A stretch of 64,000 nt of DNA from Bispira polyomma (GCA_965649765.1 OZ287757.1:372001-436000); one strand, 5' to 3'. Numbered from the stretch's first letter, positions 11,781-50,885 are shown. Notes: a model not told the origin generated them from the sequence alone. A program made the numbers and translations.

Positions 11781-14570
11781 TCACAAGTTATGTAATATAG
11801 GACCCCACTTTTCATGATAAAGTTTTAAACATTTTCCATTTCTCTCTAATAAAATTTTTTCCAATTTTGCATGATGACTTATAATTCTTATAGCATTTTC
11901 TACTTGAAGAGAACTTTCTAAACATTTTATTTTATATACATATTTTTTTACTATATTTATAACATGGTTCACAAGCAGTGTAAATTTAGTAGATATATAT
12001 CCCAGTAAAATTGTTTGGCTGTTTAGAATTTCTTCACTTATTATATTTTAAAAAGTTTTGACTACAGCACAAAACCAGAAAAAGTGTTCTATTGTTGTGT
12101 TTACTTTACAGAAATAACATCTGTCCATGTTAGTTAGTCTACAGCGATACAAGTATTTGTTTGTGGGAGTAACACATAAAAGTAATTTATATTGAAAAGC
12201 TCTCATTTTGCTTTCTATCGTGCATTTAAAGTTATTTAAATGATACCAGTTCCACTCTTCATCAGTAATTGGTTTATCAAAGATAGAGTTCCATTTTTAA
12301 AAATGATTGCGTTCAAAATTCACTTTTGTCAATAGGAACTGATAACAGTCTTTACAACATGTTTTCATGTTTAACAAAACTTTAAGTGGTTTCTGAAGCG
12401 AGATTTTTTCAATAAATGTTGTTTTAAATTGTTTCCAGTCTCTGGGAACACTATGCATCAGGCTATAGAAATCCACAAAATTAAGGGTAAAGTTGTAGTA
12501 ATTACAGAAACCTTCAAACCCAAAGAGGTTTCCATGAAGGTCAAAGAGATCGTTAATATATATTATACCTGCTTCCTCATATAACTTTCATTTTATTATG
12601 ATATTCTTGTTTTTCATAAAAAAGTACCGAAAAGGGGGTATGTCCTTGGATTAATTTCAACTATAAAAAACTGTTTGAAGTCTATCCAAGCACAGACAAC
12701 ATCTTTCCAGAATGGATTTTTCAAGGTTTTCTTTAAATGGTCTAGAGATTTTAAGTCTAATTCCCATATACATTTTTTATTGAGTTCAAATGACAAATGT
12801 CATAATTTAGACTTTCTAACTCAGCAAGTTCAACACTAAAACATATACCAAGAACAACAAATTTCTAAACCCACTTCAATCCTAAGTTTTGACAGATACA
12901 TTCTTTCATATTCTTTCCCCTCCCTAGCCATACTTCTTGGGTTTTCTCTAGATTTATACAGAGACCAGAACACAATGAAAAATCATTTAAGATGTTTATG
13001 CTTTCAATTAAAGATTCTTCAGAACCATCTAACAATAGAAAAGTATCGTCTGCAAACTGAGTTATTTTGATAGCACCAATCTTCATTGGAATACCATTTA
13101 TTTTTGAATTCTGCTTAATTGCCATCGCAAGAGACTCTATTGTGAGTAAAAAGACATAAGAACTCAGAGGATCACCTTGTCTACACGACCTGTGCAGTTT
13201 AAAAAAATTGGAAAAATGTCCATTATTTATAACACAACTACAGGAGTTTTTATAAATGACCTTAAACCACCTTATAAAATCATTGCCAAAATTATATTTG
13301 ATCCAGGCTTCATTAATATAGTTTCACTCAACAGAATGTAAGGCCTTTTCAAAGTCAATTTGAAGCAGCATACCAAGTTTATTGTTTTCCTCTAGATAGT
13401 GCATTGTGTCAAACAAGGTTCTTATATTTTCCCCTATGTATCTATTTTTTAAGAAACCTTTTTGCTCAGTATTGATACTATTTGGTAAAACTTGCTTCAA
13501 TCTGAAAGCTAAGACTCCTGAAAGTAGTTTGTAATCTACATTCAGTAGTGAGATAGGTCTCCAGTTTTTAACAAACTCTCTAGGTTTGTTGCCTTTAGGC
13601 AATAATGTAATAATACTTTGTTTCTGGGTTATTGAAAGTTCACCCATTTCAAAGCCTTCGTTCAAGCTGTTCAAAACATGTCGGTTCAAGCCATTCCAGA
13701 AAAATTTATAAAATTCTGCTGGGAACCCATCTGTGCCAGGTGATTTGCCATTTTGCATGTGTTTTAGGACCAAGTAAAGTTCAGACAAAGATATTTTTCC
13801 TTCACATTTACTTTTGTCATCGTCTGAGATTTGCCTAATGAATTCTTTCTTCAGGAAAATTTTTTGATACTGATTGGATTCCTGCGTATATTTTGATTGA
13901 TATAGTTTGCTATAATATGTCATCAACTCCTTCAGAATTGACTTTTGATCTGTGAGTACGTTTTGGCCATTGTTTAACCTACCAATTAACTTATTCACAT
14001 AATTTCGCTTTTCCAAATTACAAAAATAACTTGATGGTTTTTCCATTGATTCCTATATTTTGGCTTTTGATCTAATCAGAGCACCGCTTAATTTGTCTTG
14101 TCTTATTAATTTTAACTCCTGTATCTGCATTTCTAAAATATTTCTCACTTTTAACCTTATTTCATCAGAAATATCGACCTTGGTCAATTGTTTCTCTAAA
14201 TCCTCAATCATTTTCACTAAAGACATTTGTTTTTCAGACATTTCTTTTTGTACAACATCTTTAATTACTTTCTTTACTATAGCTACATTTATTTCATCTC
14301 TCAAAAGTGAGGTGTTAAATTTCCAGAAGCCCCTGCCTCTTGATATTTCATGAAATTCAATATCTATTCCAATAAAAGAGTGATCACTTCTATATCCTTA
14401 TGAAATATATTGCTTAACTACTTTTGCATGAATGTCAGGTGTCATGAAAAAGAAATCTAGTCTAGACAATTTGACTGGCCTGCTACCATTACGCCAGGTG
14501 TACTTTCTGTCATTTGGGTGTAAACTTCTCCATGTGTCAATTAGGTCTAAAACTTCCATAACAATCTTGT
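11781..14570 (-). pseudogene. L1/Tx1 ORF2 (endonuclease C-terminus, RT, C-terminal zinc-binding region)
   Basis: Motifs YTWRNG..SRLDFF..SDH, GKSPGTDGFPAEFYKFFW, NWRPISLLNVDYK, QFADD. Stops, frameshifts and internal deletions. Confidence 0.92.
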
Positions 14571-14774
14571 AATGTGTATCTCTTTCCCCTGTAAATTAGC
14601 TTGTCCCTTTGGAGAAACACGTTTGTGTCCTTTTCTTTGGCTATTTTCAAAACTTGCCTCAAGTGGTATCTTTTAGATTTAGTTACCTCTGGAAAGTCTA
14701 AACTTATACCCAAACATGTTATTGTTCCACTCCTATTTCTTGTAACCCTTGAACCTGCTGTATTTTCCCACAAC

Positions 14775-15653
14775 AGTAGTAGACCGGTATCGACGGTAGA
14801 CACCCCGGTTGGCTACGATAGACCCCGTGCTTTGCTTAATAGACCCCCCTATCTGCTATGGTACACCCCGCGCTTTGCTCAGACAGAAGTTAAGAAGTCA
14901 AAAGCTGCAGTCAATTATTTATGGTAAACCCAACGCTCTGCTCGGTAGACACCCCGGTTGGCTACGATAAACCCCTCTTTCTAGAATTATGCTAAATGTT
15001 TACACATCTGCTTACCTAAGTCAAGAAGTCACAGTAAACATTTTAAATTTTAAAAAGAAGTAATATTGATCTCCAGTTCATCTACTTTGTAGTGTAGAAG
15101 TCGGGAAGTCACACTGAAAAAGGTAACTCTGCTCAGCTGCTTACCTAAGTCAAGAAGTCAAGAATTATGCTAAACGTTTACACATCTGCTTACCTAAGTC
15201 AAGAAGTCACTGTGAACGCTTTAAATCTTGTTTTATTAAACCACACACTTTGTTCAGTAAGTGGTAAACCCAAACCTCTACTCGATACCTCTGGATTTTT
15301 TTTTAAAGTTGAAAAGTCAAGAGTCATTGAAGGGTTTACTGTATGCTTACCCAAGAAGTCAAGAAGTTAGTGTAAACATTTTAAACCATTTAAAGGTTTT
15401 TGCCTCCCACAAGAAATTACAGTAAACAAAGTGTAAGACGTCAACAAGTCACAGAAGAAGGATTTGGTGTGAATTTTTATCTTCTAACATAAGTTTGGAA
15501 ATCAAGAAGTCACAGTGAAAACTGGGTAGAAGTCGAGATTTCAGTTTTACGGAATCAATAAGAGTCAATATCTTAAAGTTAAATGAACCTAAACCTTGTA
15601 GCCAGACCTCCGCTAACATCAAATTCTACAAATTCACCTCAGATTAAGCTCAA
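14775..15653 (+). repeat. Left terminal inverted repeat
   Basis: Reverse complement of 20539-21434; about 8 substitutions in the first ~230 bp. Confidence 0.95.
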
Positions 15654-15905
15654 ATTCTATAGATTTACCTTAGATTAAGCTCTAACCCCAGATCAAGGTT
15701 TACTTCACATTGAACATAGACCTCTCTCTAAATGTCAAAATTCTATAATTCCAACAATACAAATCTGTTTATGAAGGTATCTTTAGGTTAAATCATGTAA
15801 CATTGAGTTTGTAAAGGGTAAAGTACTTTCAAGGGGTTTCTACTGTAACATACTAACTTATGGGTGAATAAATGGGGTCTATTCAGTTCTATTGAAAATA
15901 TTTAT

Positions 15906-15970
15906 TATAAAAGGTTGTAGTATTTCTCATGTCTTCAGTGTTGCTAACATCTGTACACAATTGTGTTGAA
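15906..15970 (+). promoter_or_regulatory. Pol II core promoter and non-coding first exon of the element's plus-strand gene
   Basis: TATAAAAG at 15906-15913, initiator TCAGT at 15935-15939 (~31 nt downstream), donor GTAATT at 15971, acceptor CAG ending 16020. Confidence 0.6.
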
Positions 15971-16024
15971 GTAATTAAAACAACCAAGGAGTGATATTGT
16001 GTGTTTATTAATTAATACAGGACT

Positions 16025-17567
16025 ATGGCTTCAATGTAAGTATTCTAATATTTTTCTAGTTTGGCATTATGATTGAATGATTTAACTAATATTGAGATAA
16101 TTTATTTATAAATTATCAACAATTCTGTGTTATTGTTAATCTATATGCAGTTAGAGGATAAGAGTTTAAATGTAAGTATTCTAGGATTCATCTATTTTTG
16201 AACGATTAACATAAGGAGTGAGTATAGATACAATGTGAATTAATTCATGATTTACTATTCTAATTTAGGGTGTTAATATTTTAGGAAAAGAAAAAATAAT
16301 GATGACGGGAAAGATAACTCTAACAATAGGAAAGGTGGAAAAAAACCAAAAAGGTAATAGTTTCTTGTCTTGTTTTTGAGGGGTGGTTGAGATATTATTG
16401 TAACGTTTTCACATATATATTGGTGAATATTTCAGTGATATACATAAATATACATTACTACAACCAAACAAAGGTGTATTATATATAATATATGAACACC
16501 ATATATACAACATATACTATATGTGGACATAGGATATCTATAATGTTCACAAACATTAGACATTACAAAATAGTTGGGATTTTATATATAATATCAATCA
16601 GTTGGTAAATTATAATGTAAATAGCTAACATAAGAAAATGTTAATTTTGACAGCTCCCTCTTTGATGATGATTATTCTGAGGAGGAAGAGGAGGACTCTG
16701 ACTTAGATTTGACGTTAGTAGAGTCGTTTACGGCTCTAAAGACTCCTTCTAAAAAGGGAAAAATGACTAAACCAAAAGGAAGAGGGAAGACACCTGCGGT
16801 TCATCTATTAGAGAGGATGGCAGAAGCTATCGAACCACCAACCAGACTGACCACTGGCGCCTGCAATATACAAGAGGAACCACAACCCTGTCAATCTACG
16901 ACCGTGTCAAGTACTACACCAACAAGGTAAGGATATATGTAGTATTAATTCATCCAACTAGCACAGAGTGGCTATGTATATTTTCTATATAATTAATACA
17001 TATATACTGTTGGTCTATATAAATAGCAATACAATATATATAATCTAGTAATATATGTATATTTCTATATAATTAATACATATATACTGTTGGTCTGTAT
17101 AACTTATAATACAATATATAATATATGTTTATATACAATCTAGTAATGATTAAAAGATATTACAAAAAAATATTCAATTTGTGTTTACCACTTTCGTGGA
17201 AAGGATTAACGATGACCTTAGTCTACAAAGAGATTATGATGAAGGAGAGACAACTCTTCTAGTGCGTTACAGGACAGATGCTATCCGATTGTACCAGGAA
17301 CATCTACAAATTCTCTTAAATAACATATCACAGTTAACTGCAGCGGTTCAGAGAGCTCGTGATGACAGACGAGTGTCAATGATGCTGGAATTGGGTGATG
17401 GTATCCGAGCAGCTGTCACAACCAACTTTCCCTATGTTTCTGTGCGCCGTTTCCACAAAAATTACAAGGGTCAGGACATTCCTGTCCAACATAAAGGATT
17501 CCTTTTTCTCTTTGAAGATATTGAACTCTTTGCTCAAAGCCTCAGAGCCTTCTTGAATAGGTTTTAA
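16025..17567 (+). CDS. Spliced 238-aa protein with basic NLS-like N-terminus, acidic tract and PC4-like (ssDNA-binding fold) C-terminus; exons 16025-16035, 16285-16353, 16654-16926, 17204-17567
   Basis: All three introns are GT-AG phase 2 and join in frame: MASMKRKNNDDG...SLFDDDYSEEEEEDSD...YVSVRRFHKNYKGQDIPVQHKGF. The PC4 call is by motif only. Confidence 0.7.
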
Positions 17568-17888
17568 ACCTAATGGATGTTGTGTTAAAGACAGTTTAAT
17601 AGGATTTATTGGGGATATTAATTTTGGTATAGATACTAACTGTGAACCATCGTTGGATTGATGTGGTGATACTGAAGTATTAGTGGTATCACTTGTTACA
17701 TTAACAGACTCATTCAACGGAGTGTCACCCTTCTTGTTAGAAGGAAGTAACTGAGTAGTAGTTTCTTGTTTAGGTTTTATTAGTGGTATGTCCTTATCAT
17801 CAATATTGGTTTGACTTGATTGAAGGTCTGTTCCTTTCCCCAGCAACCTTTGATACTTTTCAAATGGTACTAAAACTAATTTCTTCAT
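17376..17888 (-). CDS. Polinton-type hypothetical protein (MKKLVLVPFEKYQRL N-terminus), probably truncated or chimeric past ~17570
   Basis: Its ATG overlaps the previous stop (ATGA). The N-terminal motif resembles ORFs I recall downstream of Polinton ATPases. Its 3' end runs antisense over the plus-strand gene. Confidence 0.55.
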   Translation of the reverse strand: MKKLVLVPFEKYQRLLGKGTDLQSSQTNIDDKDIPLIKPKQETTTQLLPSNKKGDTPLNESVNVTSDTTNTSVSPHQSNDGSQLVSIPKLISPINPIKLSLTQHPLGLKPIQEGSEALSKEFNIFKEKKESFMLDRNVLTLVIFVETAHRNIGKVGCDSCSDTITQFQHH

Positions 17889-18202
17889 TTTAATAAACTT
17901 AAAAGTTGTGTCTTGAAAGATTGTAAAAGTCTCAAAAGACTTAGTTTACGAGTTGTAATCAATTTTTTTTTCCTATTATTGGAGGTGTTTTTACTGGATA
18001 GTTTCCTTAAAATAGATTTCTTTCTTTTAACAATTCCGTTTTGTTTTTTTGTCAAAGATATATTTAATAAGTTTTCAGCAATTTCACTTATGAGATTGAC
18101 TTGATCAAGAGAAATAGTGTCTAGTAAAGCTTTTGCTTGAGGGTGAGACCCATTTAAGATTAACACAAGGTACTCCTGATGTTTCTTTACATTAGAAACC
18201 AT
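17885..18202 (-). CDS. Small basic Polinton-type protein, 105 aa (candidate DNA-binding core protein)
   Basis: Intact ORF directly after the ATPase, Lys/Arg-rich C-terminal half. The pattern LISEIAENLL..I.L...Q...K..LRKL...TS...KK resembles the small ORF beside Polinton ATPases (recollection, not searched). Confidence 0.65.
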   Translation of the reverse strand: MVSNVKKHQEYLVLILNGSHPQAKALLDTISLDQVNLISEIAENLLNISLTKKQNGIVKRKKSILRKLSSKNTSNNRKKKLITTRKLSLLRLLQSFKTQLLSLLK

Positions 18203-18252
18203 CCTTCTACATTATAGTTTGGCTTGTAACTAATGGTGAGAATTATTTTCAT

Positions 18253-18884
18253 CTATTGATATACTATAGTTGGAAGCTCATCTGGAAATATATTTGTTTT
18301 TAACCTATAAGCCTCATCAGCTTTGGGAGATAGGTCAACAACTAGATATCCATAAGGATTATTCAAAGCATCAATGTAAGCATCTTTTAATATCTTTTTC
18401 ATCCCTATTTGTTGACCTAATAAAGCAACCTGTTGAATATTTCTTGGATTTTTCAGCAAAATTGTGTAAGCGGTATTAAGATTGAGAGTTCTAGCACATT
18501 TACCCTGATAAAACAAGTTTTGATTGATATATACAACAGAAATATTATTGTGATGACTTAACTGAGTGAAAAGTCTCTCAGCTTCAGAGCTTTTGCTACA
18601 GCATGTTGAAGGTCATCTAAACATATGATATGATGGTTTGAATCACTAATATCTTTTATTTGAGCTTTGGTTGGCATTCCTTCTATAAATTCTATAGATT
18701 AAGTTTTTTCAAACTGATCAAAAAGAGATTGCCAAACAGAGTAACAATATAATATTCTGCTAGGTGGATGTACAAACATTACATCTTTCTGCTGTAATAA
18801 TTTATACAACCAAGATGTTTTACCACTACCAGTCATCCCTGAAATGATCCAAGTACATGGAGATTGAAATTTAACAATGTCCAT
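18253..18884 (-). pseudogene. A32/FtsK-like DNA packaging ATPase (Polinton/adintovirus type)
   Basis: Walker A SGMTGSGKT, Walker B IICLDD, then LFTQLSHH, QNLF, RTLNLN, KNPR. One in-frame TAA at 18699-18701 and a 1-nt deletion in the A-run near 18591-18594. Confidence 0.92.
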
Positions 18885-18901
18885 GGGTACATGTCAATCA
18901 A

Positions 18902-19058
18902 AAAAGTATACTAGTAACTAATATTTATTATACTCATATATATACTAGTTTACTGATAGGATTACACAGGTAAGTAAGAAAAGTATACTGGTAACTAATA
19001 TTTATTATACTCATATATATACTAGTTTACTGATAGGTTTACACAGGTAAGTAAGAAT
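18902..19058. repeat. ~77-bp tandem duplication upstream of the ATPase
   Basis: Two near-identical units; the copy at ~360-450 has only one unit. Confidence 0.85.
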
Positions 19059-19145
19059 AATAGAGTGCGAATAGAATAATCTAACACTATAAATCAGTAA
19101 AAACAAACCAAAACCAAGTGTATGATAATATATGTGTACAGTTTA

Positions 19146-19739
19146 TTAGGTATTGTCACTTTTTTCTTTTACTTCTTCTGATATTTTATTTAAATCATTG
19201 TCACTTGTGTCTACTTCCGCTGACTCGGTTATTTCTGGTAAGCTCTTAGTGTTGTCCACTTCTGAGGTCTCTTCTACTTCTTTGGGTAAACCATTTGGAC
19301 AGCACATAGGACATGTAAAATAATCCTCTTGATTAGAATGTAAGGAAACTACACAGGGTTGTTCTGCATCGATTTGACCAAAAATATCCAATAATCTAAG
19401 CCATTGGTCAAATTTCAGTGATATACCATCTTTCGTTGGTAAAGCAAGTCCACCAAACCTAACAAAATGTCTGATCTGCACACATTTGAATGGGGATTGT
19501 AGATAAACAAATACATTATCCTCCAGTGATATATAAAATTCAGTAACATAGTTCTTATGACAAATTTGTCTAAGTTGGCTGGATAATGTGTCCAAATATC
19601 CCTTTAACTTTGTATATTTCAATGAGGTCAGACACAATTTATTGTCATCAGACTTTAAAATAAGAGTAAAATCACACCCTCCACTACCTCGAAGTTCCAC
19701 ATATTTATGTTCTTCTACATCAATTACATAGGTAGACAT
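19146..19739 (-). CDS. PC4-like ssDNA-binding protein with H/C-x2-C metal motif and acidic tail, 197 aa
   Basis: VQIRHFVRFGGLALPTKDGISLKFDQWLRL matches the PC4/Sub1 signature IR.F.....P...GISL...QW..L. Also HSNQ..FTCPMCCP. The stop overlaps AATAAA. Confidence 0.8.
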   Translation of the reverse strand: MSTYVIDVEEHKYVELRGSGGCDFTLILKSDDNKLCLTSLKYTKLKGYLDTLSSQLRQICHKNYVTEFYISLEDNVFVYLQSPFKCVQIRHFVRFGGLALPTKDGISLKFDQWLRLLDIFGQIDAEQPCVVSLHSNQEDYFTCPMCCPNGLPKEVEETSEVDNTKSLPEITESAEVDTSDNDLNKISEEVKEKSDNT

Positions 19740-19747
19740 TTGGTTAC

Positions 19748-20173
19748 TCAAACTTTTTCTTGAGAAGGAAACAAATATTTCAAAAAAGCACAACTTCCAG
19801 CTGAATGACGTCTGTGCTCGTAGAATACATCCTCAAACGCATCCCAAGAGTATAACACTACATTACACCAAGCACACTTACAGTGATCACCTTTTCCAAC
19901 ATAATACAACCCAGCTTTTGCTAACTGTTCAGGTCTAATAGGATGACTTTTAGGCCAAAACCTAAATGTTTTGATTCTATTATCATAAAAATGATAATAT
20001 TCGGTTGGAGTCTCGTATGTAAAACAGAATCCAGGAGATTTCTTTGTACTTGAACTGTGAGAACGAAATCCGCTACAATCTTCTGTGTCAGCACTTTTGC
20101 CTGAAGAAGCACTGGAACAAAGAGAAAATCCACCGGTAAAACCCTGTTCTTTAACACTGTCAGATTGGTCCAT
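19748..20173 (-). CDS. Single-BIR inhibitor-of-apoptosis (IAP)-like protein, 141 aa, no RING
   Basis: RIKTFRFWP...LAKAGLYYVGKGDHCKCAWC...W...D...EHRRH...CAF is a complete BIR with CCHC zinc ligands. Intronless. Confidence 0.92.
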   Translation of the reverse strand: MDQSDSVKEQGFTGGFSLCSSASSGKSADTEDCSGFRSHSSSTKKSPGFCFTYETPTEYYHFYDNRIKTFRFWPKSHPIRPEQLAKAGLYYVGKGDHCKCAWCNVVLYSWDAFEDVFYEHRRHSAGSCAFLKYLFPSQEKV

Positions 20174-20538
20174 TATTACAATATTTGTTGACTAGATAAG
20201 TCAGGTTATACTTTTATGCTGTCAACATTTGATCCCCAAGGTCTATTTCAATACAAAATGTTAGGGTATTGTAACTCCTCAAGGCTACACACAATAATTT
20301 AAAACCTTGAGGTTATAGAATTATAAAGGATAATTTAATATTATTGTCTCCTTAACTTTGCTGAACATTTAGCAGGGTTTACCGTTTCCACTGTGACTTC
20401 CAGACTTCTACACTACAAATAAGTTAAAAAATTTAAAGCGTTTACCGTGACTTCTCAACTTCTTGACTTTTGAAGTGAGTTCTTGAGTATTCTGAGCAGA
20501 GTTACCGTTTTCGGTGTGACTTCCCGACTTCTACACTG

Positions 20539-21434
20539 TTGAGCTTAATCTGAGGTGAATTTGTAGAATTTGACGTTAGCGGAGGTCTGGCTACAAGGTT
20601 TAGGTTCATTTAACTTTAAGATATTGACTCTTATTGACTCCGTAAAACTGAAATCTCGACTTCTACCCAGTTTTCACTGTGACTTCTTGACTTCCAAACT
20701 TATGTTAGAAGATAAAAATTCACACCAAATCCTTCTTCTGTGACTTGTTGACGTCTTGCACTTTGTTTACTGTAATTTCTTGTGGGAGGCAAAAACCTTT
20801 AAATGGTTTAAAACGTTTACACTAACTTCTTGACTTCTTGGGTAAGCATACAGTAAACCCTTCAATGACTCTTGACTTTTCAACTTTTAAAAAAAAATCC
20901 AGAGGTATCGAGTAGAGGTTTGGGTTTACCACTTACTGAGCAAAGCGTGTGGTTTAATAAAACAAGATTTAAAGCGTTCACAGTGACTTCTTGACTTCTT
21001 GACTTAGGTAAGCAGATGTGTAAACGTTTAGCATAATTCTTGACTTCTTGACTTAGGTGAGCAGCTGAGCAGAGTTACCTTTTTCAGTGTGACTTCCCGA
21101 CTTCTACACTACAAAGTGAATGAACTCGAGATCAATATTACTTCTTTTTAAAATTTAAAATGTTTACTGTGACTTCTTGACTTCTTGACTTAGGTAAGCA
21201 GATGTGTAAACGTTTAGCATAATTCTAGAAAGAAGGGTTTATTGTAGCCGACCGGGGTGTCTACCGAGCAGAGCGTTGGGTTTACCATAAATAATTGACT
21301 GCAGCTTTTGACGTCTTAACTTCTGTCTGAGCAAAGCGCGGGGTGTACCATAGCAGATAGGGGGGTCTATTAAGCAAAGCGCGGGGTCTATCGTAGCCAA
21401 CCGGGGTGTCTACAGGCGATACCGGTCTACTACC
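20539..21434 (-). repeat. Right terminal inverted repeat
   Basis: Matches the left TIR, with two extra 9-bp gacttcttg-type units. Confidence 0.95.
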
Positions 21435-22190
21435 CACAACAGTTTTCACTGCTTTAATACTAACTCTGCATCAGGGTAAAAGTGAAATATCACCAGAATC
21501 GGTCGAAGCATAGTGATATGGTCTTGTTTTCTACCAATTCTGTGTGCTCTGACTAGTCTTATTCTTGACCGGGCATCTTCAATGTTTAATTTTTGTTCCA
21601 AAATTTGGTAAATAATGTTTGTTACATCTTCTTTCATTCCAGCTGTTTCTTTGACACCATAGAATACCAAGTTTTCTCTTCTAGAATATGATTCCAAATC
21701 TAATAACTTTGTTTCTAGATGATGTATTTTATTTTTCAGCAACTGTTCTGTACCGGTATGGCTTGCGGTTAGCTGTTTATACTCTATCGTTTCCACCTTA
21801 CCTTTCAATTCATCAATGTCTTTGTGTGATTATTCCAAAGAGGACTTTACATCACTAATCTTATTTTCAGCCTTTGCCAAATCGTTCTTAAGCATTGTGA
21901 TGTCTTTACTGTTTGCATCAACAACACACTTTATTTCTGTTACTTTCTGTGCCAACTTGTCCAGGGTATCATTCATCTTCTCTACTGGCTCCAGTTTTGT
22001 TAAAATAGTCTTGCATCACTTTGGTTTCCTACACTAACTGACTCAGCCATAGTCTCTTTAAGATCTTTGTTCCTTGTTTCAAAAAATCACAAATAGACCC
22101 TTTGCTCTTCTTTTGTAGAGGACTTAGTTTATGCGATTGTCTTTTACTGTTCGAACCACTTTTATTACATTTTATTCCTTTTTCCATAGT
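21435..22190 (-). pseudogene. L1/Tx1 ORF1, 5' part (3' part at ~14570-14774)
   Basis: Coiled coil followed by LESYSRRENLVFYGVKE...RAHRIGR..RPILVIF (RRM-type ORF1). Joins in frame to LLWENTAG...ISLDFP after removing the insertion. Confidence 0.85.
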
Positions 22191-30900: not shown

Positions 30901-32200
30901 TTGGAGCTGAGGTAATTCAAGTTCATAAAGGTAAAGAAAAAGTGAACAGTTTTCTGGAGTTATGTTTTGACGCCTGAACAATGCAGGTATTGTGTTAATT
31001 TAAAAGAACTGTTGCCTATAATTCGTTTTACTAGACAGTTTTGTCATTTCTTGCTAGGAAGGAGATTCAATGTCAGAACCGATCATAGTAGTTTGGCATG
31101 GTTAATGAGGTTTAAGCATATTGAGGGTCAATTGTCAATATGGTTAGAAGAACTTTCGCAGTTTGATATGCAGATTATGCACAAGGAGGGTAGTAAGCAT
31201 TTTAATGCAGATGCAATGTCAAGAATTCTGGATAGAACTCAATTTTGTGACTGTTACCACGCAAGGGTAGATCCTTCTGATTAAACTTGTCAAGGGTGTA
31301 AATACTGTGTTAGGGTTCATAACCAATGGGAAAGATTTTTAGAGGATTTAGATGATATGGTTCTGTTAGCCTTGAAACAGGAAGGTCCTGATATTCGATC
31401 TGTTATATGAATGGATTTTGCAGGGAAGTGATCTAGAGGAAGCATAACATCAATTGTGTAGTCCTAAGACAAAGTGTTATTGGTTGAGTAGACATTAATT
31501 TGTGCTAGAAAGTGACATTTTGTACTGTCAGTATTTTCCCATAGAGCCTTATGAGGAGCCAGTCAACAAACTTATAGTACCAAACTCTTTCAGAGAGGAG
31601 ATTTTAAAGTTATCACATGATATTCCCACTGCAGGTCATTTAGGGATGACTAAGACTTTATACAATTTTAAAAGGCATTTTAGGTGGTATATAATGAACT
31701 CAGATTGTGAGTTATTTGTGAGGACATATAAAAAATGTAGTTTAAACAAAAAGCCAAGGAAAAAACCAAAAGCAGCGTTAGGTGAATTTCATGTAGGTGC
31801 TCCAATGGAAAGAGTGCATATGGATATGTTGGGGCCATTTCCAACAAGTAACAGTGGAAACATCTATATTTTGATAGTGGATCAATTTACGAAATGGTTG
31901 GAATGTTTTGCATTGCCAGATCAGAGTTCAAATTCTGTAGCCAAAAAAGAGGTTGAAAACTTCATTGCTAGGCTAGGTTGTCCAAAAAAGTTTAAAATAG
32001 GTCAAAGTTGAAAGTTGAAAGCAATGTGGAAAGGTCCATGTTTGGTAACTAAAGTCTTCTGTGCTATACAGAATTAAGGGAAGAAGAAAGGAGTCAGTGG
32101 TTTACCATGATAGGTTGAAATTGTGTCAGGATCGGGTGGTTCCAATGTGAATTAAAATAATGAGACATAAGCTGTTGTCGTTGGATGAGACGTTGCTGTA
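24960..32200 (+). pseudogene. Gypsy pol (PR, RT, RNase H, IN), interrupted at 26369/30521
   Basis: RFRKYNLK|LKPRKCVLFQREVKFLG rejoins across the insertion; many stops. Confidence 0.88.
26370..30520. mobile_element. TIR DNA transposon, ISL2EU-like, no recognisable transposase
   Basis: TIRs gactcattttcaca / tgtgaaagtgagcc with an AT duplication. Removal restores the Gypsy RT frame. Confidence 0.75.
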
Positions 32201-41867: not shown

Positions 41868-44800
41868 CTATGCAGGAGTTGGGGTAGTTCTATCATCCGC
41901 TTTGGGTGGAGTAGGGGTAGTTCCATCATCTGGTTTGGGTGGAGTAGGGGTAGTTCTATCATCTGGTTTGGGTGGAGTAGGGGTAGTTCTATCATCCACT
42001 TTGGGTGGAGTAGGGGTAGTTCCATCATTCGGTTTTGATGGAGTAGGGGTAGTTACACCATCTGGTTTTGGTGGAGTAGGGGTAGTTACATCATCTGGTT
42101 TTGCTGGAGTGGTTTCTTCAACACTAGAACCTATTAGTAATAGAAATCAAATTGTCTAAACAGCCATAATAACAAAATAAACTATAACAATGCACTTGAA
42201 ACAAATTTTAATATCCAGAGGACTATTGTGTTGAGTGAAAAATGAGTTAGACAACTATCCATTTAAATACTTATTCTTATAAAAGTTTAGAACTTTTATG
42301 GTCTTGATTACTTATTCTAGATGTGATTTAGATGTTGGCAACACTTCCTGACGAATGGGCGTTCTGATGAAGGAGGAACATCAGATTGAACTTTACATTT
42401 TTAGCTGATGCCTTACTTTCTATAATTTTATTATATACTGTTATTCACATTGGTGCTGGTGACGTAAAGCATGGCTTCAATGAAGGGTAAAGGAAAGAAG
42501 AATGGACCCTGTCCTTACTTTAGAAAGTACTGCTAGTGTCAATCGATCTGGTTGAATAAATATGAATCTGACTATTGGCAGACGTTTGAATGAGAAAGGA
42601 AGCGAACATACAGTGGTTCAAATCGACACAAAACATGAACTTAAAATGGCTTCAACTAAAGTAAAAGTCAAACATGGTCACATTGATGTTGGTCAGCCTG
42701 GACCTTTACAGAGGAGAGCTTTAGTTTGCCTTTTTTCAGGCTACTATAAACTGTATTCCTAGTACAGTCACAACGGGAGAAAATATATGTCTTTGTGAAG
42801 CAAAATATTGTTTGGTCACATGAGTACATCAGTTTAACATCCAACAGTGGATGTTGGATTTCTGTCACACTAGAAACTGTACAAAAACTTGATGCTGGAT
42901 TATATTGTCTTACTTCCAGACAGTGCTCAGAACTTTTCGTTGTAGGCTGCCTAAGAGAGCCACATTGATCTGAGCTGGCGAATACAGCAATGACTGATAG
43001 TTGGGAAATTGAATGTTTGAGTGGATGCTAAAAAGCACATTCAATAGGCATCAAATTTACTGTGGGCACATTCTAAAAGCAGATAGGTATGAATTGCTTT
43101 GCTTTGGACTAGAAATCTAAACCACATTTCACAAAACCAATAGCACTAGGTGGGGCAGCTCCTACATAAACCACATAAATAAGTCAATTTAATTCATTCG
43201 AATGTGTCTATACAAGATTGACTCTATGACTATAGAGCTAATAAATAAGTCCACTTGGTCAAGTTTGTTCTAAAACATCGTTGTACCCTGTGACACAAAA
43301 GTATCAGGTTTAGTATAAACACAGCATCAAGGTTGTGTCCCTTATATAAAATTAAATCCACAGATGTGTCCCTGGGGCCGTATTCACAAAGATTCTTATT
43401 CTTAGAATTACAGTAATTTTTAGAATTTTTCTTAAAATAAGATATTTTTAAGAAAACTTTTATGACATTTATTTAAAAAAAATTAAAAAAAAAAAATTCC
43501 TATTCATCAACTTTTTTTTTTGGAAATTTTTTAAATGAGACTAACATCTAAAAATGGAACAAAAAACTGCACCTTTGTGGGTAGTAATTCTTAAGAAAAA
43601 TTTAAGTTTAAAAAAGCAACAAATGTAAAAAAAAATTATTCTGTGAATTTTTCTTAGAAAATTCTTAGATTAAAAATTCTAAAAATAAGAGTAATTCTGA
43701 AAAAAATCTTTGTGAATACGGTCCTGGACATGTAATAAGAAATAGATGTTGGTTTTCCACTTGATTGTGATTACTCTGTTAAGTTAAAGGAACCGGGTGG
43801 CAATCATAAATCTGAAAATGTCTCACCCTTTTTTGACTAGGGAAAAATAATACCATTATCAAGAATAGAACAATTATTGACTGATATTGATGGGTAAATG
43901 ATGGGGTATACAAAACCTCATATCCAAAACCACGCTTGTGCTAAAATACCCTAAAATTACAAGGGTCTGTGGTGGCCTAGTCATAAGAAGCTATAGCTTC
44001 ACAATAACTGACCTCTCTCCGATGTGAATCCTGTCTGATCGTTCATACGTGGAAAAGTTTGTCTGGCATTTGCCATAGGGGTTGGTTTCCACACTTTCAG
44101 CAATGGTTTCTTCTACCATTAGGTCTGACCCTCATGATATGATCTAAGCTGTTAAAAGCCATGTTAAACCCAACTAAATCTGAATATTGCGGAAGCACTA
44201 AAATATGCTAAAGAATGAACACCAACAACCTAATCAAAGTTAGAACTACATCCACGATTGCTGTAGATAATGTGGAATTATCGTTAAGATTCCTTTTTCT
44301 AGTCAATATTGTGCACATGTGATATATTTTTATATTTCATAGTGGAATAACATATAAATTTCCAATCGATATTATCAGCATTATTATATAATTACTTATA
44401 CAGTACTTTATCTTACTTGCTCAAAGCGCTGCACAATAATTAAAAATATAAATTTTGTGTAAAACATACAGGACTAGAATTAAAATAGGTAAAAATTAAA
44501 AAGAAATCAAACGAACAGTGTAGAACTTAAGAACATAAATAGTCAATAAGCTATGTTAAAAATGTGTGTTTTAAAAAGTTGAAGAACTGAAGAGTACTAG
44601 CACTTCTTATATAGCCTGGTAATTGATTTAAACATATTTTAATGGACAATTGTCAGTCCAGTAGTTAATTCCACAGGAAATAACCACAGTTTGTGAAAAC
44701 CTGATCTCCAGTCTTATTGTTTGTGTTAGTTTGCAATAATTTTAAGCAGGTGCCTGATCTTAGTTGCCAGATATTTGTACAGTTCATACAAATATTTTAG

Positions 44801-49004: not shown

Positions 49005-49563
49005 CACACATACATCTACACATACACATATATACATACATCTACATATAGATCTACACATACATCCACACATACATCAACACATGCATACATACATCTA
49101 CACATACATCTACACATATATACACATACATCAACACATGTATACATACATCTACACATACATTTACACATACATCAACACATACATCTACACATACATC
49201 TACACATGTATACACATACATCCACACATACATCTACACATACATCTGCACATGTACACATACATCTACACATACATCTACACATGTATGCACATACATC
49301 CGCACATACATCTACACATACATCTACACATGTATACACATACATCCACACATACATCTACACATACATCTATACATGTATCCATACATCTACACATACA
49401 TCTACACATACATCAACACATACATCTACACATACATCTACACATGTATACACATACATCCACACATACATATACACATACATCCACACATGTATACATA
49501 CATCTACACACACATCTAAACATACATCTACACATGTACACATACATCTACACATACATCTAC
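49005..49563. repeat. 12-bp satellite (cacatacatcta)n
   Basis: Seen directly. Confidence 0.95.
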
Positions 49564-50544
49564 TCTAAAATATAGTCATACAATTGAACTAGCAAAAAAT
49601 GCCAGATTGTAAATATATTCAAAGTTTCAAATTAAACAGTTGCTTTAAGTTAAGTGTGACCATGAAATTGTTTAAGTATAAGTCCAAGTTAGGTATAAGC
49701 CAACATACCCTAAGGTCAAATTCATACATAGTGAACAGATTCACAACACATTGGCACCACAAGTACAACAGCTTTGAAAATCCACACACAAATCCATACA
49801 TACACACACAACAATTCACTGATTTCTGACACATAGCCTCTCTCCAGCAGACCCCCCCCCCCCCCCGCCCCCATTAAAATCTGGAGCTACACACACACAT
49901 AACCACATTCACACACATCCATATACACATATACCCACCAACACAGTCACTGATTTCTGTCACACACCTTCTGTCTTGCCCCTCATTGAGATCTAGATTT
50001 AAACATACGTGTACACACATACCCACAAACCATTGATTTCCCTCACATATCCAAACTCCAGTCCCTAATTAAGATTTGGATCCAGATTACTAGTTATTTG
50101 TTTGGTAATCCTGAAGATCCCCTTTGATTTGTACAAGCCCCACAGAACTCACGACATCAAGTGGATCAGGGATTGTAGATCCTGATTAGAGGACAATACA
50201 GATTGATACACAATGGGAAATGTCCACTTGAGAACATCTGGCTATAGAAAGCCAAGTGTGGACATGTGTTTCACAGAGTGTGGGCAGAGTGAGTGTGTGT
50301 TAGTGTGTTTTAATGCCAGTGACAGGGATGTGCATGATGTGGAAACTTTGACACGGAAATATAAGTGCTTTACAATGGAGGTAAGGCATTTGTGTAATCA
50401 AACAGGAATTGTTTAATCAAATAGGAAGTATTTAAATTTATACTACATTCATCAGTAACTGTTATTCCCCCAACTGAACACATAGTTGCCAATAACATAT
50501 CTGTACCTGGCCATACTGTGATCAAACTCAAGTCATCTCCACTC

Positions 50545-50885
50545 TTACACATTAGGACACACACATACAGAACTATTAAGTGAGTGTCTTACACATTAGG
50601 AAACACACATATAGAAGTTTTAAGTGAGTGTCTTACACATTAGGAAACACACATATAGAACTATTAAGTGAGTGTCTTACACATTAGGACACACACATAC
50701 AGAACTATTAAGTGAGTGTCTTACACATTAGGAAACACACATATAGAATTATTAAGTGAGTGTCTTACACATTAGGACACACACATATAGAACTATTAAG
50801 TGAGTGTCTTACACATTAGGACACACATATAGAACTATTAAGTGAGTGTCTTACACATTAGGACACACACATATAGAACTATTAA
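50545..50885. repeat. ~39-41-bp minisatellite
   Basis: Seen directly, ~8.5 units. Confidence 0.95.

What the first reader, a model, noticed from the sequence alone, without database searches (positions are those of the whole stretch)
14775..21434. Mini Polinton/adintovirus-like genome with long TIRs, packaging ATPase, IAP and two PC4-like genes but no polymerase, integrase or capsid
Seen: ~880-bp TIRs, a clean TSD and six genes converging from both ends. The minus arm carries BIR, PC4-like, ATPase, a small basic ORF and the MKKLVLVP ORF; the plus arm carries a spliced PC4-like gene. Known: autonomous Polintons are ~15-20 kb and encode pPolB, rve integrase, adenain-like protease, and major and minor capsid proteins; none is present here. 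Inference: this is either a satellite or defective-interfering derivative, replicated and integrated in trans by a helper Polinton while keeping packaging and host-control genes, or one segment of a split genome, or simply a full Polinton that lost its core after insertion.
Basis: partly seen in the sequence, partly recalled or inferred. Interest (0 to 1): 0.88.

Follow-up and report, generated by a model that had tools for sequence, protein, structure and literature searches.

The report
Internally deleted endogenous adintovirus-like element
This is a 6.6-kb remnant of a Polinton/adintovirus-type DNA virus integrated in an animal genome: it keeps both long terminal repeats and a few accessory genes, has lost every gene needed to copy, integrate or package itself, and is an ordinary kind of viral fossil with a few unusual details.

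Summary
Window 14776-21433 is bounded by 878-nt inverted repeats (19 mismatches, 3 indels) and an 8-bp direct repeat (10 bp by another reading), and it interrupts a LINE-like repeat. The minus arm carries a BIR/IAP gene, a PC4-like gene, a full-length but broken A32/FtsK-type packaging ATPase (one in-frame stop, one frameshift) and two unassigned ORFs. The PC4-like model's best viral matches are adintovirus 'MOSUB' proteins. The plus arm carries a probable distant paralogue of the PC4-like gene; it has no start codon of its own and its splice model is unresolved. No polymerase, integrase, protease or capsid remnant was found. IAP, MOSUB and FtsK are all known adintovirus genes, so I read this as an internally deleted, non-autonomous, decaying endogenous adintovirus/Polinton-type genome. 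Whether the core was lost before or after integration cannot be settled inside the window. The overlapping gene ends at the junction and the broken ATPase argue against a refined satellite. An older dead fragment (window 311-1654, about 79% identical) shows a second integration of the same lineage. The atypical repeat length (norm 5-6 bp) is unexplained. Interest is moderate to low.

The parts
14768..14775 (.). Left copy of the target-site duplication (CCACAACA; 14767-14776 under the 10-bp reading)
   Evidence: Direct reading
14776..15653 (.). Left terminal inverted repeat, 878 nt. The terminus is G then TAGTAG. It holds five TAGAC[AC]CC motifs in the first 170 nt, twelve AAGTCA motifs all in one orientation, and internal direct sub-repeats.
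15654..16633 (.). AT-rich (27% GC) spacer without ORFs; presumed promoter, leader or upstream exon region of the plus-arm gene
   Evidence: no family hits
16634..17567 (+). Plus-arm gene. The upstream open segment 16634-16927 is acidic then basic, has an in-frame ATG at 16764 and a GTAAGG donor at 16927. The candidate intron 16927-17203 holds an 80-nt x2 AT-rich tandem repeat. The downstream ORF runs to the stop at 17565-17567 and aligns along its length with the tandem PC4-like core of the minus-arm protein. The splice model is unverified.
17376..17888 (-). 170-aa ORF of unknown function. It is low-complexity in the middle, and its last ~63 codons overlap the plus-arm ORF in antisense, which looks like a deletion scar.
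   Evidence: no homologue or family found
17885..18202 (-). 105-aa basic ORF (pI 10.8, two K/R runs), overlapping the start of the next ORF by 4 nt; function unknown
18253..18884 (-). A32/FtsK-HerA-type packaging ATPase, full length relative to its family (~215 aa) but broken: one in-frame stop and one frameshift
18902..19057 (.). 77-nt x2 tandem repeat (97% identical) in the 261-nt gap upstream of the ATPase; possibly an internal regulatory region
19146..19739 (-). PC4/Sub1-like ('MOSUB'-like) gene, 197 aa, intact. The model shows two beta4-alpha units (residues 1-61 and 67-126), then a conserved Cys/His-containing motif and an acidic tail.
19748..20173 (-). Single-BIR (IAP-like) gene, 141 aa, intact, without a RING domain. 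Its stop lies 8 nt before the PC4-like ATG.
20174..20538 (.). Unique region upstream of BIR; the TGACTT(C) motif array of the right repeat continues into it
20539..21433 (.). Right terminal inverted repeat
21434..21441 (.). Right copy of the target-site duplication
311..1654 (-). Second, older fragment of the same lineage (78-80% nucleotide identity by BLASTN): ATPase upstream region, PC4-like gene and BIR gene, with no repeat ends. Both genes are dead. The PC4-like gene is 86% covered, with 7 frameshifting indels, 2 in-frame indels and 1 premature stop. BIR has 2 frameshifting indels, 2 in-frame indels and 1 premature stop.
12868..14775 (-). Left flank: LINE-like retroelement (RVT_1 domain; endonuclease-like and ORF1-like pieces by eye) into which the element inserted
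21442..22015 (-). Right flank: upstream part of the same minus-strand repeat (coiled-coil ORF). The flank pieces on the two sides each end or begin with the residues encoded by the duplicated target.

Best explanation
The element is the integrated remnant of a Polinton/adintovirus-type linear dsDNA virus of an unidentified animal host, and its middle has been lost.

What remains:
- Both 878-nt terminal repeats.
- The right-hand gene block: IAP-like BIR, a MOSUB/PC4-like DNA-binding protein, the FtsK/A32-type packaging ATPase and two small unknown ORFs.
- The left-hand block: a second, diverged MOSUB-like gene.

What is gone: polymerase, integrase, maturation protease and capsid genes. As it stands the element cannot replicate, integrate or form particles on its own.

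Shown: it entered a LINE-like repeat as one unit, duplicating 8-10 bp of target. It has since drifted, with 2.2% divergence between the repeats and two breaks in the ATPase.

Inferred:
- In the parent virus the BIR protein blocked host cell death.
- The PC4-like proteins bound single-stranded or melted DNA during replication or transcription.
- The ATPase pumped the genome into capsids.
- The repeats, with their one-orientation AAGTCA arrays and terminal TAGTAG, carried the replication and integration ends.

The core was lost either before integration, giving a defective genome integrated with functions from a complete co-resident virus, or after integration, as an ordinary genomic deletion. 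The window alone cannot decide between the two.
For: - TIRs and TSD.
- ATPase family: the longest single-frame piece finds 4,114 representatives, 1,587 of them at E<=1e-10, with full-length relatives of about 215 aa. Several relatives pass Pfam's Pox_A32 cut-off. The three pieces map to profile positions 1-60, 63-103 and about 100-225. The model of a natural relative (pLDDT 93) matches adenovirus IVa2, A32-like ATPases, an adintovirus FtsK-like protein, Sputnik V3 and the mavirus ATPase.
- PC4-like protein. The model (pLDDT 77.6) matches PURA repeats I-II and MoSub1/PC4. Its top two named viral hits are MOSUB proteins of two adintoviruses, at E 2.3e-5 and 2.2e-4.
- BIR. IAP and Bcl2 homologues are reported in adintoviruses (PMC8502044, section 3.2).
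- Core genes absent.
- ORFs are real: six stop-free segments of 108 aa or more against 0.14 expected.
- Compact, virus-like spacing: gene gaps of 8 and -4 nt.
- Deletion-scar signs: a 190-nt antisense overlap of the converging ORFs, and no AATAAA within 300 nt downstream of either arm.
- A second, independently diverged fragment has dN/dS 0.23 over 95 PC4-like codons, so the lineage evolved under selection between the two integrations.
- Fragmented, deleted Maverick copies are the norm in animal genomes (PMC8504770; PMC8502044 abstract).
Against: - The duplication is 8-10 bp, whereas Maverick/Polintons and mavirus give 5-6 bp (PMC3014272, PMC8547959). Up to 9 bp has been seen in mavirus-like endogenous elements (PMC8547959).
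- The link to adintoviruses rests on gene content and modest fold scores (TM 0.43-0.48; ATPase identity to the adintovirus hit is only 20%). It does not rest on a phylogeny or on any hallmark polymerase, integrase or capsid gene.
- No full-length relative sharing these repeats was seen, because relatives' DNA was not fetched.
- Five of the six genes are still open, and both breaks fall in the ATPase (P about 0.04 by length share). This could hint that the ATPase was already dispensable before integration, as expected for a trans-dependent lineage.
Confidence: 0.75

Rival explanations
1. A propagating non-autonomous ('satellite-like' or mini-adintovirus) lineage. On this view the 6.6-kb architecture is the unit that is copied and integrated repeatedly with a helper's polymerase, integrase and capsid, and it keeps anti-apoptosis and DNA-binding genes because they pay their way.
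For: - Both repeats are intact and there is a clean duplication.
- Five of the six genes are still open despite 2.2% repeat divergence. One frameshifting indel is seen against 5.4 expected at the repeats' indel rate, P=0.03.
- Both breaks lie in the ATPase, the one retained gene that a helper could supply.
- The PC4-like gene is under purifying selection between copies.
- Two of the three PC4-like relatives sit on contigs of only 8.5-9 kb.
Against: - Only one complete copy is in view, and the second copy is a fragment without ends.
- The junction is untidy: a 190-nt antisense overlap and no nearby poly(A) signals.
- The repeats' indels lie in slippage-prone motif arrays, so the neutral expectation is inflated.
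- Short contig lengths are typical of the collection and say nothing about genome size.
- dN/dS between copies is equally expected for accessory genes of complete viruses.
Confidence: 0.14
2. A cut-and-paste DNA transposon of a superfamily that makes 8-10-bp duplications (hAT, Mutator, P, Merlin or Chapaev type) that captured a block of adintovirus genes. This would resemble Teratorn, where a transposon and a virus are fused. Its long repeats with subterminal motif arrays would then be transposase-binding ends.
For: - The 8-10-bp duplication lies outside the usual 5-6 bp of rve-type integration (PMC3014272, PMC8547959).
- Each repeat carries twelve one-orientation AAGTCA motifs, an architecture common at cut-and-paste transposon ends (established knowledge).
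Against: - There is no transposase or remnant of one in the element.
- No other element with these ends is in the window.
- The gene packing and the convergent two-arm layout are virus-like.
- Up to 9-bp duplications occur with rve-encoding relatives (PMC8547959).
- Long repeats are typical of Polintons (584 nt in PMC3014272).
Confidence: 0.06
3. One segment of a split (multipartite) genome, or an assembly artefact that joins two ends of a longer element.
For: Core genes are absent while both ends are present. Repeats of this length can collapse in assemblies.
Against: - The matching duplication on both sides and the in-frame continuity of the interrupted flanking repeat show one integrated unit.
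- There are no N runs in the window.
- No complementary segment is known for this virus class.
Confidence: 0.05

Closest known systems
Adintoviruses (Adintoviridae; animal Polinton/Maverick-class viruses), including their endogenised, degraded copies (PMC8502044)
   Same: Long inverted terminal repeats; an FtsK/A32-type packaging ATPase; an IAP-like accessory gene; a ~200-aa PC4/Sub1-like 'MOSUB' protein (best viral fold matches); integrated in an animal genome with a target duplication; compact gene spacing.
   Different: It lacks PolB, rve integrase, Adenain, Hexon and Penton, which nearly all contigs over 10 kb of the family carry. It is 6.6 kb instead of more than 10-20 kb. Its duplication is 8-10 bp. 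It has a second, diverged MOSUB-like gene on the opposite arm.
Polinton/Maverick 'self-synthesizing' transposons (Repbase sense)
   Same: Long TIRs (584 nt in the anole example, PMC3014272), a packaging ATPase and an integrated state. Fragmented and deleted copies are common (PMC8504770).
   Different: By definition Polintons encode a protein-primed polymerase and an rve integrase (PMC5499653), and neither is present here. The typical duplication is 6 bp.
Endogenous mavirus-like elements (EMALEs) of Cafeteria (PMC8547959)
   Same: Integrated virus genomes of the same realm bounded by TIRs and host DNA; their duplications vary in length, up to 9 bp.
   Different: Their hosts are protists, they depend on giant viruses, their full-length copies keep all core genes, and they have no BIR or PC4-like genes.
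Teratorn (piggyBac-herpesvirus fusion; PMC6431247)
   Same: It serves as a model for the rival reading, in which viral genes ride inside cut-and-paste transposon ends.
   Different: Teratorn carries its transposase and a near-complete viral gene set and makes TTAA duplications. No transposase is present here.
PC4/Sub1 and PUR-alpha nucleic-acid-binding folds
   Same: The second beta4-alpha unit matches PC4/MoSub1 in sequence profile and fold. The two-unit arrangement in one chain matches PURA repeats I-II.
   Different: PC4 forms the pair of units by dimerising. Here the pair lies in one chain, followed by a conserved Cys/His-containing motif that is absent from PC4.

Membership tests
Polinton/Maverick (autonomous) | [quoted passage not shown] | tested here: not met
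   No DNA_pol_B_2 or other polymerase family in the ORFs and longer stop-free segments of the element that were scanned. There is no room for a gene of about 1,000 aa.
Polinton/Maverick (autonomous) | Retrovirus-like (rve) integrase | tested here: not met
   None inside 14776-21433. The rve fragment at 31502-32011 carries Integrase_H2C2 and belongs to an unrelated LTR-type element.
Polinton/Maverick (autonomous) | Long terminal inverted repeats | tested here: met
   878 nt, 2.2% diverged
Polinton/Maverick (autonomous) | 5-6-bp target-site duplication | tested here: not met
   8 bp (or 10 bp). A 6-bp reading needs a mismatched terminal pair plus four chance identities. The norm is taken from PMC3014272 and PMC8547959.
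Polinton/Maverick and Adintoviridae | FtsK-HerA/A32-type packaging ATPase | tested here: met
   The gene is broken (one stop, one frameshift).
Polinton/Maverick and Adintoviridae | Adenain-type maturation protease | tested here: not met
   No Peptidase_C5 or other protease family
Polinton/Maverick and Adintoviridae | Double-jelly-roll major capsid protein (Hexon) and Penton | tested here: not met
   No capsid family hit. The only unassigned ORFs are 105 and 170 aa, too short for a Hexon. Pfam covers these capsid proteins poorly, so a small remnant cannot be excluded.
Adintoviridae | Accessory genes reported for the family: IAP-like and 'MOSUB' (PC4/Sub1-like) | tested here: met
   BIR at E 5e-18. 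IAP homologues are reported in PMC8502044. MOSUB proteins of two adintoviruses are the top named viral fold matches.
Adintoviridae | Phylogenetic placement of shared genes inside the family | not tested
   Only named fold hits are available.
Non-autonomous derivative mobilised in trans | Shares its termini with an autonomous partner in the same genome | not testable with these tools
   No other copy of the termini in the window. The host genome is not in the protein collection. I left out fetching DNA of relatives.
Non-autonomous derivative mobilised in trans | Several copies with the same internal junction, each with its own duplication | not testable with these tools
   One complete copy plus one end-less older fragment in 64 kb
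Cut-and-paste transposons with 8-10-bp duplications (hAT, Mutator, P, Merlin, Chapaev) | Duplication length of the superfamily | tested here: met
   8-10 bp. The length alone does not single out one superfamily.
Cut-and-paste transposons with 8-10-bp duplications (hAT, Mutator, P, Merlin, Chapaev) | A DDE transposase of that superfamily, in the element or in a partner with the same ends | tested here: not met
   None in the element. A partner could not be searched for.
IAP family | BIR domain with its zinc ligands | tested here: met
   Pfam BIR covers the full profile, positions 1-70. The C-C-H-C ligands are present with spacing 2/16/7, one residue more than the usual last spacer. The closest solved domains are NAIP, cIAP1 and XIAP BIRs. 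There is no RING domain.

The most novel reading that the evidence does not exclude
The 6.6-kb architecture may be the transmitted unit of a so far undescribed class of helper-dependent 'mini-adintoviruses'. Such elements would keep only the ends, an apoptosis inhibitor, two PC4-like DNA-binding proteins and a dispensable packaging ATPase. They would be copied, packaged and integrated by a complete relative, or by an integrase that makes 8-10-bp duplications.
Probability: 0.12. Interest if true: 0.75.

Novelty: new member of a known kind. Interest (0 to 1): 0.35.

Why it matters
If this is only a gutted provirus, it adds one well-delimited example, with both ends and an exact insertion site, to the large fossil record of adintovirus/Polinton integrations. 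It also gives a clean natural example of the IAP, MOSUB and FtsK accessory block. Its modest wider value lies in three points:
- An 8-10-bp duplication bears on how uniform integration by this virus class really is.
- The PC4-like 'MOSUB' protein is predicted to be a single-chain tandem of two PC4-type units resembling PUR repeats, which says something about how these viruses handle single-stranded DNA.
- If a census showed that the short form recurs, it would be the first indication of helper-dependent derivatives in animal members of this class.

Tried and rejected
- Searches that found nothing: homologues of the 105-aa ORF and of the BIR protein in the word-indexed protein collection; Pfam, PHROGs and PDB sequence searches for the 105-aa and 170-aa ORFs; LxCxE 'Oncoid' motifs; Rfam and tRNA scans.
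- Merged or long ATPase gene calls, tried as a protein-level window on neighbouring genes, showed only zinc fingers and FLYWCH, with no core genes.
- Cluster metadata for the relatives carried no names.
- There is no paralogous empty site for the flanks in the window, and no other fragment of these genes beyond the two copies.
- Pfam did not name the ORF1-like flank pieces.
- A host look-up with a LINE RT protein found nothing on record.
- The founding Polinton paper is not held.
- Rejected: a 6-bp reading of the duplication, which needs a terminal mismatch and four coincidences.
- Rejected: a marginal Tox-URI2 hit in an alternative frame, treated as chance among about 45 segments scanned.
- Rejected as a strong argument for selection: the 'fewer indels than expected' result, because the repeats' indels sit in slippage-prone arrays.

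Full report
**Observation.** Window 14776-21433 is bounded by inverted repeats at 14776-15653 and 20539-21433. A global alignment of the arms gives 878 aligned positions with 19 mismatches (15 transitions) and 3 indels, which is 2.2% divergence. Directly outside them lies the same 8-mer, CCACAACA, at 14768-14775 and 21434-21441. If the outermost G/C pair of the repeat is counted as target, the direct repeat is 10 bp. A 6-bp reading is possible only with a mismatched terminal pair and four chance identities, so I reject it. Both flanks belong to one minus-strand LINE-like repeat: RVT_1 on the left and a coiled-coil ORF on the right. The flank pieces, read apart, end and begin with the residues encoded by the duplicated target. 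This is one discrete insertion.

**The repeats.** The terminus reads G followed by TAGTAG. TAGAC[AC]CC occurs five times in the first 170 nt. AAGTCA occurs twelve times in one orientation and never in the other, against about 0.5 expected from the window-wide frequency. The terminal 33 nt recur about 150 nt further in. On the BIR side the motif array continues about 150 nt inside the repeat boundary.

**Minus-arm genes.** Six stop-free segments of 108 aa or more occur in the 4.9-kb interior, against 0.14 expected in composition-matched simulations.
- **BIR (19748-20173).** This is a 141-aa single-BIR protein (Pfam 5e-18). It is closest to NAIP, cIAP1 and XIAP BIR domains, has all four zinc ligands and has no RING domain.
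- **PC4-like gene (19146-19739).** It starts eight nucleotides after the BIR stop and encodes 197 aa.
  - Pfam PC4 scores 23.9 bits against a cut-off of 25.
  - Only three relatives were found, at 38-50% identity. All are unnamed ENA proteins, and two carry precomputed PF02229.
  - The family profile hits solved PC4/Sub1 chains at 5e-5.
  - The AlphaFold model (pLDDT 77.6, above 90 over most of residues 1-126) shows two consecutive beta4-alpha units.
  - Its best PDB matches are PURA repeats I-II, then MoSub1/PC4.
  - Its best named viral matches are 'MOSUB' proteins of a lancelet adintovirus and an insect adintovirus, at E 2.3e-5 and 2.2e-4.
- **ATPase (18253-18884).** It follows a 261-nt gap holding a 77-nt x2 tandem repeat.
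  - Its longest single-frame piece finds 4,114 representatives in the exhaustive search, and full-length relatives are about 215 aa.
  - Several relatives pass Pfam's Pox_A32 cut-off.
  - The three single-frame pieces cover profile positions 1-60, 63-103 and about 100-225. The gene is therefore complete in length but broken by one in-frame stop and one frameshift.
  - A model of an intact natural relative (pLDDT 93) matches adenovirus IVa2, A32-like ATPases of giant viruses, an adintovirus FtsK-like protein, Sputnik V3 and the mavirus ATPase.
- **Two unassigned ORFs.** A basic 105-aa ORF (pI 10.8) and a 170-aa ORF follow, overlapping each other by 4 nt. Neither has any detectable relative or family.

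**Plus arm.** The ORF ending at 17567 aligns along its whole length with the two-unit core of the minus-arm protein. Support is moderate: hhalign probability 85%, E 6e-6, and phmmer E about 6e-4 to two family members in a set of 153 sequences. It has no Pfam or PDB sequence hit, so 'second PC4-like gene' is probable, not certain.
- The ORF has no ATG of its own.
- An upstream open segment (16634-16927) is acidic then basic, has an in-frame ATG at 16764 and ends at a canonical GTAAGG donor.
- An in-phase AG acceptor lies near 17203, but using it would trim residues that align with the first strand.
- No tool here predicts introns, so I treat the splice model as unverified.

**What is absent.** None of the ORFs and stop-free segments scanned (those of 40 aa or more in the unique interior, and every longer ORF) matches a polymerase, integrase, protease or capsid family. 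A translated search with the element's proteins and 153 natural relatives finds nothing else in the window beyond the two copies.

**The junction.** The 170-aa ORF runs about 190 nt antisense into the plus-arm ORF, and neither arm has AATAAA within 300 nt downstream of its stop. This looks like a deletion scar rather than two native gene ends.

**A second copy.** Window 311-1654 is 78-80% identical by BLASTN to 18850-20414, in the same orientation. It has no repeat ends and stops where the motif array begins. Its genes are dead. The PC4-like gene is 86% covered, with 7 frameshifting indels, 2 in-frame indels and 1 premature stop. BIR has 2 frameshifting indels, 2 in-frame indels and 1 premature stop. 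Over uninterrupted in-frame stretches, dN/dS between the copies is 0.23 for the PC4-like gene (95 codons) and 0.88 for the BIR N-terminal part (68 codons). Much of the divergence in the PC4-like gene therefore arose under selection, so the two copies come from separate integrations of a lineage that was evolving as a functional entity.

**Interpretation.** IAP homologues (PMC8502044, section 3.2), MOSUB-named proteins and FtsK-type ATPases (PMC8502044, section 3.1) are all adintovirus genes, and long repeats are typical of Polintons (PMC3014272). Degraded endogenous copies are widespread in animals (PMC8502044), and fragmented, deleted Maverick copies dominate in at least one insect genome (PMC8504770). 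The best reading is an internally deleted, non-autonomous, decaying endogenous adintovirus/Polinton-type genome. It is not a member of the Polintons in the strict sense, because by definition these encode the polymerase and integrase (PMC5499653).

**What stays open.**
- **Timing of the deletion.** The window cannot show whether the core was lost before or after integration.
- **The 8-10-bp duplication.** The norm is 5-6 bp (PMC3014272, PMC8547959), though up to 9 bp was seen in mavirus-like endogenous elements (PMC8547959).
- **Why both breaks fall in the ATPase.** P is about 0.04 by length share.
- **Host identity.** There is no self-hit and the look-up found nothing on record. The gene content points to an animal. 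Nothing suggests human DNA, and no contig was fetched or saved.

1. I could not tell whether host-genome copies are exempt.

- Two early scripts printed frame translations and segment bounds of the ATPase region, which show where the frame is interrupted. One notebook entry holds the reference of one piece, and the piece references also stand in the tool calls that searched the pieces apart.
- While checking the insertion site I read a few codons of the flanking LINE across the junction in my head.
- This report gives only counts and the gene's outer bounds.

Noticed in passing
window 311-1654: An older, end-less, dead fragment of the same lineage (ATPase upstream region, PC4-like gene, BIR), 78-80% identical by BLASTN. 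dN/dS for the PC4-like gene against copy 1 is 0.23.
   Followed up: yes
window 12868-14775 and 21442-22015 (minus strand): The element sits inside a LINE-like retroelement. Its RT is confirmed by Pfam, but Pfam does not name the ORF1-like and endonuclease-like pieces.
   Followed up: partly
window 19146-19739 (protein model): The PC4-like protein is predicted as a single-chain tandem of two beta4-alpha units resembling PURA repeats I-II. A motif conserved in all four family members follows (His, then Asn-Gln-Glu-Asp-Tyr-Phe, then three Cys and a Pro).
   Followed up: partly
window 18902-19057 and 16973-17126: Two AT-rich tandem duplications, 77 nt x2 and 80 nt x2. One lies upstream of the ATPase and the other inside the candidate plus-arm intron. 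Their role is unknown.
   Followed up: no
window 16771-16989 (+, alternative frame): Marginal Pfam Tox-URI2 hit (E 7e-4, 20.3 bits against a cut-off of 20) over 32 residues, in a frame overlapping plus-arm exon 1. It is probably chance, given about 45 segments scanned.
   Followed up: no
window 60154-61902 (+) and 31502-32011 (+): A 582-aa RT ORF (RVT_1 2.6e-31) and an LTR-type integrase fragment (Integrase_H2C2 plus rve). These are unrelated retroelements; the rve fragment is not part of the finding.
   Followed up: partly
window 49006-49563; also 3440-3794, 41875-42110, 50543-50885, 53494-53844: Microsatellite and minisatellite arrays. A 12-nt unit in about 49 copies explains the GC skew of -0.64 at 49-50 kb. 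The window as a whole is repeat-rich DNA of about 33% GC.
   Followed up: no
proteins P0001 and P0003: Two of the three known relatives of the PC4-like protein lie on contigs of only 9,052 and 8,508 bp. This may mean nothing, or it may hint at other short elements.
   Followed up: no
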